A stretch of DNA of 63,621 nt, filler included, from Octopus bimaculoides (Eukaryota), in assembly GCF_001194135.2 (NCBI RefSeq). It is 5 parts of 4 records of this genome, joined end to end, with 100 filler letters (N's around TTAATTAATTAA, not from the genome) between each part and the next. Parts side by side here need not be neighbours in the genome. Positions count along the whole stretch, not along the records: positions 1 to 22,884 come from NC_068996.1; 4 more parts are not named here. The stretch is one strand, 5' to 3'. Positions 4,745-5,761 of the stretch are shown piece after piece. Position 1 is the first letter of the stretch. The number at the start of each line of letters is the position of its first letter. A program made the position numbers and the translations under genes. The notes under the pieces were generated by a model that searched no databases, was not told the origin of the DNA, and worked only from the letters and a program-made list of their open reading frames with translations.

Positions 4745-5761
4745 ATGATGGACCAGAGTCTTTCCCAATTGAAGAGCGGTAGCAGTAATAGAGAAGAGCC
4801 TCCATATGATAACCAACCGAGAAGCGTTGCAATAAATAACCATAAAATTGATCGAACAGATAAAAGTTCACGTGCAAGAGAAGTACAGAAGAGGAAACGT
4901 CGACCAATAAGGACAAGGGGGGGATGGAACAGTCCCAGAAGGGAAAAGATTGTAAATTACAAAATTATAAGGCGCCCTTCTTCAAGGACAAGGACTAGAC
5001 GGCACGCTGCAGACATACCCCCTCCAAGGAAAAGGATTATAAAGTGCGGATTAGTTAGAAGGGGACCTAGCCTTTCAAGTGGAAAAAGGATTGTAAACTG
5101 CAGAGTTAAAAGGCGCCCTCGGAATACTACAAAGTGGAAAACAGCGGGAAGATCCCCTTCAGAGACAAGGCTCTATTCAAGGGGAGAGACCACTACATGG
5201 GGAAGGAGGAGGCGTTGCAGAGTTATAAGGCGCCCTCGGAATACTAAAAGACGCGGAAGAGTGGGAAGGTCCACTTTAAGAGGAAGCTACATTTCAAGGG
5301 CAAGGTCCCCTGTAAGAGCAAGTTCCCTTTCAAAAGCAAGTTCCTCTTCAGTATCATATTCTTCAAGGGCAATGTCCCCTTCAAGAAGAAGGTGCCCTTC
5401 ATGGTCAAGTTCCCCTTTAAGAGCAAGACGCCTTTCAAGGGCAAGGTCCCTTTCAATGGGAGGGGGCTCTTCAAAGCCAGGGTGTCGTAGAAGAAGAAAA
5501 CTTTCAAAGTGCGAATTAATGAGAAGGCGCGCTTCAAGAAGAAGGCGCGCTTTAAGAAGATTGCAGGAGTTAAAAAGAAGGCGCCTTTCAAGAAGAAGGC
5601 GCGCTTTAAGAAAGTGCGCTTTAAACAAAATGCGCGCTTTAAAAAGAAAGCGCGCTTTAAGAAGAAAGCGCGCTTTAGGAAAGAAGCGAAGGTGTCGCCC
5701 AAAGAGAAAACAGCGAAAGTGTCGCCCAAAGAGAAAACGGTCAACGTGCCAGCGAAAATAG
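4745..5761 (+). CDS. Single-exon Arg/Ser/Lys/Cys-rich basic protein (338 aa), protamine-like / sperm nuclear basic protein candidate
   Basis: Uninterrupted ATG-to-TAG frame. Hand count about 91 Arg, 32 Lys, 10 Cys. SRARSP-like and RRRRAL 6-aa repeats; acidic residues concentrated in the first about 50 aa. The function is inference. Confidence 0.6.
   Translation: MMDQSLSQLKSGSSNREEPPYDNQPRSVAINNHKIDRTDKSSRAREVQKRKRRPIRTRGGWNSPRREKIVNYKIIRRPSSRTRTRRHAADIPPPRKRIIKCGLVRRGPSLSSGKRIVNCRVKRRPRNTTKWKTAGRSPSETRLYSRGETTTWGRRRRCRVIRRPRNTKRRGRVGRSTLRGSYISRARSPVRASSLSKASSSSVSYSSRAMSPSRRRCPSWSSSPLRARRLSRARSLSMGGGSSKPGCRRRRKLSKCELMRRRASRRRRALRRLQELKRRRLSRRRRALRKCALNKMRALKRKRALRRKRALGKKRRCRPKRKQRKCRPKRKRSTCQRK

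What the first reader, a model, noticed from the sequence alone, without database searches (positions are those of the whole stretch)
4745..5761. Intact intronless 338-aa Arg/Ser/Cys-rich ORF: candidate large protamine-like sperm protein precursor
Seen: the only long clean ORF in 63 kb of decayed sequence. It is about 36% Arg+Lys with 10 Cys and has three zones: a less basic, acidic N-terminal leader; K-R-I-V-N-C-R-V-x-R-R-P repeats; then SRARSP and RRRRAL hexapeptide repeats ending in CRPKRK doublets. Established: mollusc sperm nuclear basic proteins are SR/Arg rich, cephalopod protamines are cut from precursors, and octopod ones can be Cys-crosslinked. Inference: an unannotated polyprotein precursor of sperm chromatin proteins, easily masked as low complexity.
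Basis: partly seen in the sequence, partly recalled or inferred. Interest (0 to 1): 0.8.

Follow-up and report, generated by a model that had tools for sequence, protein, structure and literature searches.

The report
Orphan arginine-rich ORF in octopod DNA
An intact, unannotated 338-codon reading frame in an octopus-like genome would encode a very basic, mostly disordered 40-kDa protein and has gene-like signals around it; a sperm-chromatin role is plausible but untested, and it is not a classical protamine.

Summary
ORF 4745-5761 (+) is intact, 338 aa, 36.4% Arg+Lys, 10 Cys, with the described motif, SRARSP, RRRRAL and CRPKRK repeats.

It is longer than chance gives: 0 of 300 whole-piece shuffles and 0 of 5000 local shuffles reach it. 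Its first 500 nt are open in this frame only. Its C-terminal half is an 18-nt minisatellite open in 4 of 6 frames. Purely repeat-made ORFs of 256-300 aa are common in other octopod DNA, so length alone is weak evidence there.

Five register shifts of the 18-nt unit are all in frame. Upstream lie a CCAAT box, the window's only full CRE (a perfect 14-nt palindrome) and a TATA-like box. The ORF's ATG is the first downstream of them, and polyA signals follow the stop.

No relative exists in Pfam, PDB, two protein collections that do hold Octopus and Argonauta proteomes, IMG/VR or JGI metagenomes. No second copy occurs in 150 kb of other octopod DNA.

At 27% Arg and 40 kDa it fails the protamine definition. 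It fits "protamine-like" by composition only, with no H1 domain.

Best reading: a lineage-restricted intronless gene for a basic nuclear protein, possibly spermatid-expressed. I put the chance that it is a gene at about 0.5-0.6 and that it is a sperm protein at about 0.25-0.3. Expression and orthologues could not be tested.

The parts
4614..4618 (+). CCAAT box, 131 nt upstream of the ATG
   Evidence: Read from the sequence. A consensus match only; function not tested.
4634..4647 (.). Perfect 14-nt palindrome TTATGACGTCATAA containing the full cAMP response element TGACGTCA
   Evidence: The only TGACGTCA in the window. 0.20 are expected per window from 100 shuffles, so about 0.0015 expected in any given 150 nt. 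It lies 108 nt upstream of the ATG.
4646..4655 (+). TATA-like box TAATATATTT directly after the CRE; the inferred transcription start is about 25-35 nt downstream (~4680)
   Evidence: Read from the sequence. There is no ATG between 4650 and 4744, so the ORF's ATG is the first one downstream. The transcription start is inferred, not shown.
4745..5761 (+). 338-aa ORF (ATG in context AAAAATGATGG, TAG stop): 40.0 kDa, pI ~12, 26.9% R, 9.5% K, 13.6% S, 10 Cys
   Evidence: shuffle tests; frame map.
4745..4879 (+). N-terminal leader, aa 1-45. It is non-repetitive and weakly charged (aa 1-25 net -2) and is predicted disordered
4943..5239 (+). Four copies of a Cys-bearing 11-12-aa motif (EKIVNYKIIRRP, KRIIKCGLVRRG, KRIVNCRVKRRP, RRRRCRVIRRP) inside 117-141-nt higher-order repeats. 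This region is open only in this frame
   Evidence: (family D4, spacings 141 and 117).
5258..5485 (+). Ser/Arg-rich hexapeptide array (SRARSP, VRASSL, RARSLS and similar), aa 172-247, 33% Ser. The 18-nt unit is TTCAAGGGCAAGGTCCCC
5507..5692 (+). Arg/Lys-rich RRRRAL-type hexapeptide array, aa 255-316. It is predicted as one 62-residue helix. The 18-nt unit AGAAGGCGCGCTTTAAGA contains the 12-nt palindrome AAAGCGCGCTTT
   Evidence: AlphaFold2 pLDDT 92-97 for aa 255-316 with the rest below 50; RNA fold z = -3.5.
5693..5758 (+). C-terminal tail, aa 317-338 (CRPKRKQRK CRPKRKRST CQRK). It holds a 27-nt doublet, 3 Cys and 59% R+K
   Evidence: period 27, 96% match; D7.
5975..5980 (+). ATTAAA, candidate polyadenylation signal 214 nt after the stop
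   Evidence: A consensus match only.
6073..6078 (+). AATAAA, candidate polyadenylation signal 312 nt after the stop, 19 nt before an assembly gap (N from 6097)
   Evidence: A consensus match only.

Best explanation
The locus is most likely a lineage-restricted, intronless, so far unannotated protein-coding gene of an octopod.

The coding region grew by in-frame amplification and divergence of one 18-nt unit, together with 117-141-nt higher-order repeats. The product is a 40-kDa, pI ~12 protein that is largely disordered, has no signal peptide, and should be nuclear and bind nucleic acid.

Proposed mechanism (inferred, not shown):
1. Transcription starts about 30 nt downstream of a TATA-like box, under control of a palindromic CRE and a CCAAT box. 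This is the promoter logic of post-meiotic male germ-cell genes.
2. The protein enters the spermatid nucleus.
3. Its Ser/Arg-rich middle region is a phosphorylation-regulated spacer.
4. The 62-residue Arg/Lys helix and the CRPKRK tail neutralise and condense DNA.
5. The 10 spaced cysteines could form intermolecular disulfides.

In function it would be a protamine-like or transition-protein-like chromatin-condensing protein. It is not a canonical protamine, and it is not shown to be a polyprotein.
For: Shown:
- An intact 338-aa ORF inside a 373-codon stop-free run that exceeds every shuffle: 0 of 300 for the whole piece, 0 of 5000 for the locus, 0 of 5000 for the N-terminal half alone.
- In the N-terminal 500 nt only this frame is open. 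The other two + frames carry 13 and 10 stops there, and all three minus frames carry stops as well. In the young repeat part four frames are open. That is the pattern expected if only this frame is kept open over time.
- The core TTYAARRR occurs 15 times, always in the same codon phase. Meanwhile the 18-nt register shifts five times, by -3, -9, -3, -9 and -3. 36 of 38 self-alignment offsets are multiples of 3 (spacings).
- The ORF's G+C (46%) stands out from AT-rich flanks (27-29%). CpG is not depleted (observed/expected 0.81 in the ORF and 1.1-1.9 in the flanks, against 0.58 for the rest of the piece).
- CCAAT at 4614, the window's only TGACGTCA inside a perfect 14-nt palindrome at 4634-4647 (0.20 expected per window), a TATA-like box at 4646, the first downstream ATG in an A-rich context, and ATTAAA/AATAAA 214 and 312 nt after the stop.
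- Composition 36.4% R+K, 13.6% S, 10 Cys, 40.0 kDa. This falls inside the compositional and size range given for PL-type SNBPs (Arg+Lys-rich, 6-40 kDa; PMC11607694).
- A confident 62-aa basic helix with the rest disordered.
- No copy of the locus in the rest of the window or in 150 kb of O. sinensis, O. vulgaris and A. hians DNA, where SINE-like repeats from the same window have 5-25 copies.

From the literature:
- CREM/ACT bind CREs in the PRM1, PRM2, TNP1 and TNP2 promoters (PMC8753101).
- SNBP precursors have a less charged N-terminal part and a highly charged C-terminal part, and are almost never annotated (PMC12216123).
Against: - No relative was found anywhere, although the protein collections do contain O. 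bimaculoides, O. sinensis, O. vulgaris and A. hians proteomes. An abundant, conserved testis gene would probably have been annotated in at least one of them.
- The motif copies differ as much at codon positions 1 and 2 as at position 3, with 0-2 synonymous against 8 non-synonymous codon changes per pair. There is therefore no signature of purifying selection between repeats.
- The C-terminal half is open in 4 of 6 frames, and repeat-made ORFs of 256-300 aa are frequent in octopod DNA.
- The in-frame register shifts could arise from slippage on AAG triplets and 9-nt half-units, without selection.
- The promoter and polyA elements are short consensus matches chosen after the fact.
- A testis or sperm role rests only on composition and the CRE. 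Arg content is far below that of cephalopod protamines (up to 80% in squid; PMC11607694).
Confidence: 0.45

Rival explanations
1. A non-coding accident. A purine-rich, partly palindromic 18-nt minisatellite with no stops in four frames has expanded next to a stretch that happens to be open in the same frame. No protein is made.
For: - The C-terminal half is an 18-nt array open in 4 of 6 frames.
- Simple-repeat ORFs of 256-300 aa occur four times in 34.5 kb of Argonauta DNA.
- No homologue exists in annotated octopod proteomes.
- There is no excess of third-position changes between repeat copies.
- The unit contains AAG triplets and 9-nt half-units that could bias slippage towards multiples of 3.
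Against: - The 609-nt non-minisatellite part is open only in this frame, and 0 of 5000 composition-matched shuffles reach it.
- The other frames that are open in the young repeats have collected 2-13 stops in the older part, while this frame has none.
- The first ATG after a CCAAT/CRE/TATA-like cluster opens the frame, and polyA signals follow it.
Confidence: 0.3
2. A real gene, but for a general nuclear, nucleolar or RNA-binding Arg/Ser-rich protein (RS-domain-like or ribosome-biogenesis-like), or a young de novo gene with no settled function. It would not be a sperm chromatin protein.
For: - 15 SR/RS dipeptides and a 33% Ser zone.
- A long basic helix and disorder are typical of RNA-binding low-complexity proteins.
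- CRE and CCAAT boxes are not testis-specific.
- The literature itself warns that many arginine-rich proteins, for example ribosomal ones, are not SNBPs (PMC12216123).
Against: - No RRM or other domain, and no relative, whereas general nuclear factors are normally conserved.
- The net charge of about +110, with almost no acidic residues after aa 45, is more extreme than in typical RS proteins.
Confidence: 0.15
3. An ORF belonging to a low-copy mobile element, a retroposed gene copy or an endogenous viral element that encodes a basic nucleic-acid-binding protein.
For: - The surroundings are rich in transposable elements: gag-like ORFs, SINE-like repeats and a processed retrocopy.
- A-rich 14-mers at 4511-4524 and 5855-5868 could be read as target-site duplications flanking a 1.3-kb insert that ends in an A-run (family D8).
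Against: - No TE or viral domain and no IMG/VR relative.
- No second copy in the window or in 150 kb of other octopod DNA.
- The putative duplications are low-complexity A-runs. The insert would include its own promoter and lacks a polyA signal before the A-run, which does not fit an mRNA retrocopy.
Confidence: 0.08

Closest known systems
Protamine-like (PL-type) sperm nuclear basic proteins of molluscs (e.g. Spisula PL-I, Mytilus PL-II*/PL-III/PL-IV) and the insect SNBP precursors
   Same: Rich in both Arg and Lys, Ser-rich, and at the top of the 6-40 kDa range (PMC11607694). A weakly charged N-terminal part is followed by a highly charged C-terminal part, and such genes are usually missed by annotation (PMC12216123).
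   Different: No histone H1/H5 winged-helix domain and no sequence similarity to any known protein. It is built from an in-frame 18-nt minisatellite. Processing and sperm localisation are not shown.
[quoted passage not shown] 2002, cited in PMC11607694 and PMC12216123)
   Same: Arg clusters interspersed with Ser and Cys, and a possible precursor-like N-terminal leader. The Cys residues could give inter-protein disulfides, as reported for Eledone.
   Different: Protamines are 3-10 kDa with up to 80% Arg (PMC11607694). This ORF is 40 kDa with 27% Arg, and even its C-terminal 91 aa have 40% Arg plus 18% Lys and about 12% Leu. The published octopod protamine sequences were not on hand, so no direct comparison was made.
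Mammalian transition proteins and protamine 1 (TNP2, PRM1)
   Same: A CRE close to a TATA box upstream of a short, basic, Ser/Cys-containing protein gene (PMC8753101). The C-terminal CRPKRK...CRPKRK recalls the CRPRYRPRC end of human PRM1, whose sequence was recalled from memory.
   Different: No significant alignment to human PRM1 (BLASTP E = 13). The resemblance is compositional and, if real, convergent. This protein is three to seven times larger.
RS-domain (SR-related) nuclear proteins
   Same: A Ser/Arg-rich low-complexity region with 15 SR/RS dipeptides, predicted disordered.
   Different: No RRM or other domain, almost no acidic residues, and additional Cys motifs and a Lys/Arg helix.

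Membership tests
Protamine (P-type SNBP) | Very high arginine (up to ~80%) and small size, 3-10 kDa (PMC11607694) | tested here: not met
   Whole ORF: 26.9% Arg, 40.0 kDa. The most basic module (aa 248-338): 39.6% Arg, 17.6% Lys, 11.7 kDa.
Protamine (P-type SNBP) | Sequence relationship to known cephalopod protamines or their precursors | not tested
General searches gave no hit at all.
Protamine (P-type SNBP) | Replaces histones in spermatids and is the major basic protein of sperm nuclei | not testable with these tools
   Needs testis RNA or protein data from the source species.
Protamine-like (PL-type SNBP) | Rich in both arginine and lysine, 6-40 kDa (PMC11607694) | tested here: met
   R+K 36.4%, 40.0 kDa, pI ~12. 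It lies at the upper size limit.
Protamine-like (PL-type SNBP) | Descent from histone H1/H5: a winged-helix globular domain in the protein or its precursor (PMC11607694) | tested here: not met
   No Pfam family at E <= 10. No PDB sequence match beyond E = 0.16 to an unrelated coiled coil. AlphaFold2 shows no globular domain.
Protamine-like (PL-type SNBP) | Testis-specific expression and presence in sperm chromatin | not testable with these tools
   No transcriptome or proteome of the source species is reachable.
Polyprotein precursor cut into several SNBPs (as for Mytilus PL-II*/PL-IV) | Defined internal cleavage sites giving separate mature products | not testable with these tools
   The sequence is dibasic almost throughout, so no site can be singled out. 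Only the three-zone layout is seen.
CRE/CREM-type post-meiotic promoter | A full or half CRE within about 100 nt of the transcription start, next to a TATA box (PMC8753101) | tested here: inconclusive
   TGACGTCA at 4637, within the palindrome 4634-4647, is followed by TAATATATTT and lies 108 nt before the ATG. It is the only one in the window, with 0.20 expected. Binding, the transcription start and tissue specificity are unknown.
SR / RS-domain splicing factors | At least one RRM plus an RS domain | tested here: not met
   No RRM. An RS-like region is present (15 SR/RS dipeptides).
Multi-copy satellite or transposable element | Many dispersed or tandem copies; TE protein domains or terminal repeats | tested here: inconclusive
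   No further copy in the 22.9-kb piece or in 150 kb of O. sinensis, O. vulgaris and A. hians DNA. No TE domain. This sample excludes only families of more than about 10^4 copies; the source genome itself could not be searched.

The most novel reading that the evidence does not exclude
The ORF is a previously unseen class of octopod sperm chromatin protein. It would be a 40-kDa, Cys-bearing, Arg/Lys/Ser-rich precursor born and enlarged by in-frame expansion of an 18-nt minisatellite, unrelated to histone H1 and to the classical cephalopod protamines. It would be transcribed post-meiotically from a CRE/TATA promoter, and possibly trimmed to its 11.7-kDa C-terminal helix-plus-CRPKRK module, which would cross-link sperm DNA through disulfides. 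That would be an independent, recent origin of a protamine-like function.
Probability: 0.2. Interest if true: 0.55.

Novelty: new variant of a known kind. Interest (0 to 1): 0.35.

Why it matters
Sperm nuclear basic proteins evolve fast, are low in complexity and are almost never annotated. For octopods only protein-chemical data on Cys-rich protamines exist, with no gene models.

If this ORF is expressed in spermatids, it would be a gene-level handle on octopod sperm chromatin condensation. It would also be an example of a protamine-like protein arising from a minisatellite rather than from histone H1.

If it is not expressed, it is a useful warning: in repeat-rich cephalopod genomes a 338-codon ORF with plausible promoter motifs can still be non-coding.

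Either way the question can be settled with existing public RNA-seq and genome assemblies.

Tried and rejected
**Homology.**
- Exact-sequence look-up of the ORF found nothing.
- Pfam found nothing.
- The word-indexed 5.8-billion protein search found nothing.
- Full phmmer against 1.84 billion representatives found nothing.
- PDB sequences gave only E = 0.16 to a coiled coil.
- IMG/VR and JGI metagenome scans found nothing.
- Rfam found nothing on the whole piece.

**Other frames and the other strand of the locus.** There was no Pfam family, except a sub-threshold pentapeptide-repeat match (E = 0.0014, 19.2 bits against a cut-off of 27) for the +0 frame. I treat that as repeat noise.

**Synteny.** I tried to reach the orthologous locus through a neighbouring gene. 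The only neighbour with close relatives (P0006 of O. sinensis and P0007 of A. hians) turned out to be the parent of a processed retrocopy in the window. The fetched loci L001 and L002 are therefore not syntenic and hold no orthologue of the ORF. L003 (O. vulgaris) shares only TE fragments with the window.

**Apparent tblastn hits in Argonauta** (E about 1e-10 with filters off). These are a (TCT)n microsatellite translating to poly-Arg and were rejected.

**Exact look-ups of two TE ORFs**, tried to identify the source assembly, were not on record.

**Selection between internal motif copies.** There is no third-position excess, so the test is uninformative or negative.

**Structured non-coding RNA.** The RRRRAL-coding array folds better than shuffles (z = -3.5) because of the AAAGCGCGCTTT palindromes, but the SR array does not (z = -0.55), and there is no Rfam match. 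I do not pursue this as the main explanation.

**mRNA retrocopy flanked by A-rich 14-mers** (family D8). Rejected as low-complexity coincidence. The insert would carry its own promoter and would lack a polyA signal before the A-run.

**BLASTP against human PRM1** (sequence recalled from memory). Not significant.

**Literature.** The searches did not yield any octopod protamine sequence or testis proteome to compare with.
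Full report
**1. What is there**

The + strand carries an ATG-to-TAG reading frame at 4745-5761 that encodes 338 residues. The frame is stop-free from 4637 to 5759, a run of 373 codons.

The product has 26.9% Arg, 9.5% Lys, 13.6% Ser and 10 Cys, and only 3.8% Asp+Glu. Its mass is 40.0 kDa, its pI about 12 and its net charge about +110.

- **Leader.** The first 25 residues are mildly acidic (net -2).
- **Motif repeats.** Copies of a Cys-bearing motif lie at aa 67, 96, 114 and 154, with a degenerate fifth at 251: EKIVNYKIIRRP, KRIIKCGLVRRG, KRIVNCRVKRRP, RRRRCRVIRRP and RKLSKCELMRRR.
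- **SR array.** SRARSP-type hexapeptides run from aa 172 to 247, with 33% Ser.
- **Basic array and tail.** RRRRAL-type hexapeptides run from aa 262 to 315, followed by a CRPKRK doublet.

The only overstatement is 'acidic leader', which is true of just the first 25 residues.

**2. Anatomy at the DNA level**

From about 5258 to 5690 the ORF is one continuous array of 18-nt units. There are two diverged versions of a single unit, TTCAAGGGCAAGGTCCCC and TTTAAGAAGAAGGCGCGC, which share 12 of 18 positions. A 27-nt doublet follows. Traces of the unit and 117-141-nt higher-order repeats extend back to about 4940.

The second version contains the 12-nt palindrome AAAGCGCGCTTT. This explains two things: both strands are open there, and the RNA of 5480-5760 folds better than shuffles (z = -3.5). 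The SR-coding part does not fold better than shuffles (z = -0.55).

**3. Is the ORF more than chance?**

No shuffle reaches the real stop-free run:
- whole piece, dinucleotide-preserving: 0 of 300 (maximum 241 codons);
- the locus itself: 0 of 5000 (maximum 282);
- the 609-nt part upstream of the minisatellite: 0 of 5000 reach 200 codons (maximum 185).

Two calibrations cut the other way. The C-terminal half is open in four of six frames. In 34.5 kb of Argonauta DNA there are four ATG-ORFs of 256-300 aa made of nothing but simple repeats. The weight of the argument therefore rests on the N-terminal 500 nt.

In those 500 nt only this frame is open. The other two + frames hold 13 and 10 stops, and all three minus frames also contain stops. 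Frames that are open in the young repeats have thus decayed in the older part, while this one has not.

A second line of evidence comes from the repeat register. The core TTYAARRR occurs 15 times, always in the same codon phase, while its 18-nt register changes five times by -3, -9, -3, -9 and -3. Also, 36 of 38 ungapped self-alignment offsets are multiples of three. If indel lengths were unbiased, five in-frame shifts would have p of about 0.004. Slippage on AAG triplets or 9-nt half-units could produce the same pattern, so this is supportive rather than decisive.

Comparison of the motif copies shows no excess of third-position change. There is therefore no positive sign of purifying selection between the repeats.

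**4. Surroundings**

Upstream elements:
- a CCAAT box at 4614;
- the perfect palindrome TTATGACGTCATAA at 4634-4647, which holds the only full CRE of the window (0.20 expected per window);
- a TATA-like TAATATATTT at 4646-4655.

No ATG intervenes before 4745, which lies in an A-rich context (AAAAATGATGG). ATTAAA and AATAAA follow the stop at +214 and +312 nt. An assembly gap begins at 6097.

The ORF is a G+C island (46%) between flanks of 27-29% G+C. CpG is not depleted across about 3-9 kb (observed/expected 0.8-1.9), against 0.16-0.5 at 13-19 kb. This fits a germline-unmethylated, tissue-restricted locus, but it does not prove one.

All these signals are short consensus matches that I looked for after seeing the ORF. 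In mammals, CREM/ACT bind CREs in the PRM1, PRM2, TNP1 and TNP2 promoters (PMC8753101), and that is the only link to spermatids.

**5. Relatives**

None were found:
- exact look-up;
- Pfam at E <= 10;
- the 5.8-billion-protein word-indexed search;
- the exhaustive phmmer scan of 1.84 billion representatives;
- PDB sequences;
- IMG/VR and JGI metagenomes;
- Rfam;
- the other frames of the locus in Pfam, apart from one sub-threshold pentapeptide-repeat match for the +0 frame (E = 0.0014), which I treat as repeat noise.

The controls matter. A gag-like ORF of the window hits Octopus bimaculoides and O. vulgaris proteins. A composite of other window ORFs hits O. sinensis and Argonauta hians proteins. 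The collections therefore do contain octopod proteomes, and the window comes from an octopod.

The ORF is thus unannotated or absent in those species. It also counts against an abundant, conserved testis gene.

**6. Attempt to reach an orthologous locus**

The O. sinensis gene for P0006 (691 aa, 53.7 kb) and its Argonauta counterpart were fetched with 10-kb flanks.

Window 19018-19907 aligns as eight abutting blocks to eight separate exons spread over 16 kb of that gene. The protein alignment covers aa 294-598, with a disruption. The window therefore holds a processed retro-pseudogene, not the gene itself, and the fetched loci are not syntenic.

These loci, plus an O. vulgaris locus, served as 150 kb of octopod background. 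SINE-like elements of the window have 5-25 copies there, whereas the ORF locus has none. Apparent tblastn hits in Argonauta are a (TCT)n tract.

Very high copy number is thus excluded. Low copy number, orthology and expression remain untested.

**7. The protein**

AlphaFold2 without an alignment predicts disorder everywhere except a single 62-residue helix at aa 255-316, with pLDDT 92-97. That helix is the RRRRAL array.

With a six-residue period, the Leu/Ala positions fall on three stripes 120 degrees apart, not on a heptad seam (my inference). There is no signal peptide-like hydrophobic N-terminus, and basic clusters suited to nuclear import are abundant (read from the sequence).

**8. Comparison with known families**

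By the definitions quoted in PMC11607694:
- Protamines are 3-10 kDa with up to 80% Arg. The ORF fails this (27% Arg, 40 kDa), and so does its most basic 91-aa module (40% Arg, 18% Lys).
- PL proteins are Arg+Lys-rich and 6-40 kDa. The ORF meets this, at the upper size limit.
- Mollusc PL proteins descend from histone H1 and carry, or derive from a precursor with, a winged-helix domain. None is detectable here.

The design recalls the insect SNBP precursors described in PMC12216123, with a weakly charged N-terminus and a strongly charged C-terminus. The tail CRPKRK...CRPKRK recalls the CRPRYRPRC end of human PRM1 (sequence from memory), but BLASTP finds nothing significant.

From memory, and unverified here, published octopod protamines are small and consist almost only of Arg and Cys. 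That would not fit any segment of this ORF.

**9. Verdict**

The feature is real, and it is more gene-like than a typical repeat ORF. I rate the chance that it is a genuine protein-coding gene at about 0.5-0.6.

If it is a gene, a role in spermatid or sperm chromatin is the single most likely function, but it rests on composition and one promoter motif. Overall I put that reading at about 0.25-0.3.

It should not be called a protamine or a protamine precursor. 'Candidate protamine-like (by composition) basic protein, orphan' is the defensible label. The 'polyprotein' idea has no evidence for or against it.

The main rival, at about 0.3, is a non-coding minisatellite-derived ORF.

Public RNA-seq and octopod assemblies, which these tools could not reach, would settle the matter quickly.

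Noticed in passing
window 18994-19907 (- strand): A processed, intronless retro-pseudogene fragment of a coiled-coil gene. Eight abutting blocks match eight separate exons spread over 16 kb of the O. sinensis gene for P0006 ('M protein, serotype 5', 691 aa, faint CEP89) at 84-96% nt identity. It covers aa 294-598 and has a frame disruption near 19350-19400.
   Followed up: yes
window 20945-21914 (- strand): Two consecutive ORFs (134 and 195 aa) of a retrotransposon gag region. The 195-aa ORF matches O. bimaculoides 'Retrotransposon gag domain-containing protein' (45% identity) and an O. vulgaris model named 'arsenite methyltransferase-like' (64%). That model appears to include TE sequence.
   Followed up: partly
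window 2023-2529 (- strand): A 168-aa ORF with a CCHC zinc-knuckle-like CVKCDEKGHIRTHC. It looks like a gag remnant, but it has no Pfam hit and is not on record.
   Followed up: partly
window 6384-6717, 13498-13715, 17038-17458: SINE-like dispersed repeats. Each has about 5-25 copies at 70-88% identity within 73.7 kb of O. sinensis DNA, and some copies in Argonauta.
   Followed up: partly
window 18317-18404 and 18510-18597: An 88-nt exact direct duplicate. Its first copy immediately follows the N gap at 18223-18316, and the second lies 193 nt further on. It looks like a scaffolding or gap-closing artefact.
   Followed up: no
window 3001-9000 versus 13001-19000: A sharp difference in CpG depletion: observed/expected 0.87-1.2 around the ORF, against 0.16-0.48 at 13-19 kb. 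This suggests a boundary between germline-unmethylated and methylated DNA.
   Followed up: no
window 11037-11417, 12804-13177, 18773-19019: Large (TACA)n/(ATGT)n microsatellites in both orientations, which form 200-nt inverted repeats with one another. They also generate spurious 100-150-aa ORFs.
   Followed up: no
window 10384-10710 (- strand) and 14052-14408 (- strand): By eye, two ORFs look like a mariner-type transposase N-terminus and a LINE reverse-transcriptase C-terminal fragment. Neither reached Pfam significance.
   Followed up: no
window 5522-5686: The RRRRAL-coding units each contain the 12-nt palindrome AAAGCGCGCTTT, so the putative mRNA could form a series of GC-rich hairpins (z = -3.5 against shuffles). 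Whether this matters, for example for translational storage, is unknown.
   Followed up: partly
L001 16513-17466 (+) and 57671-58624 (-): Two copies, in opposite orientation, of a 317-aa ORF of unknown function (MFRQAIANNFPRNSKYY...), identical over the 150 residues printed. They lie inside introns of the O. sinensis gene and are probably a young transposable element.
   Followed up: no
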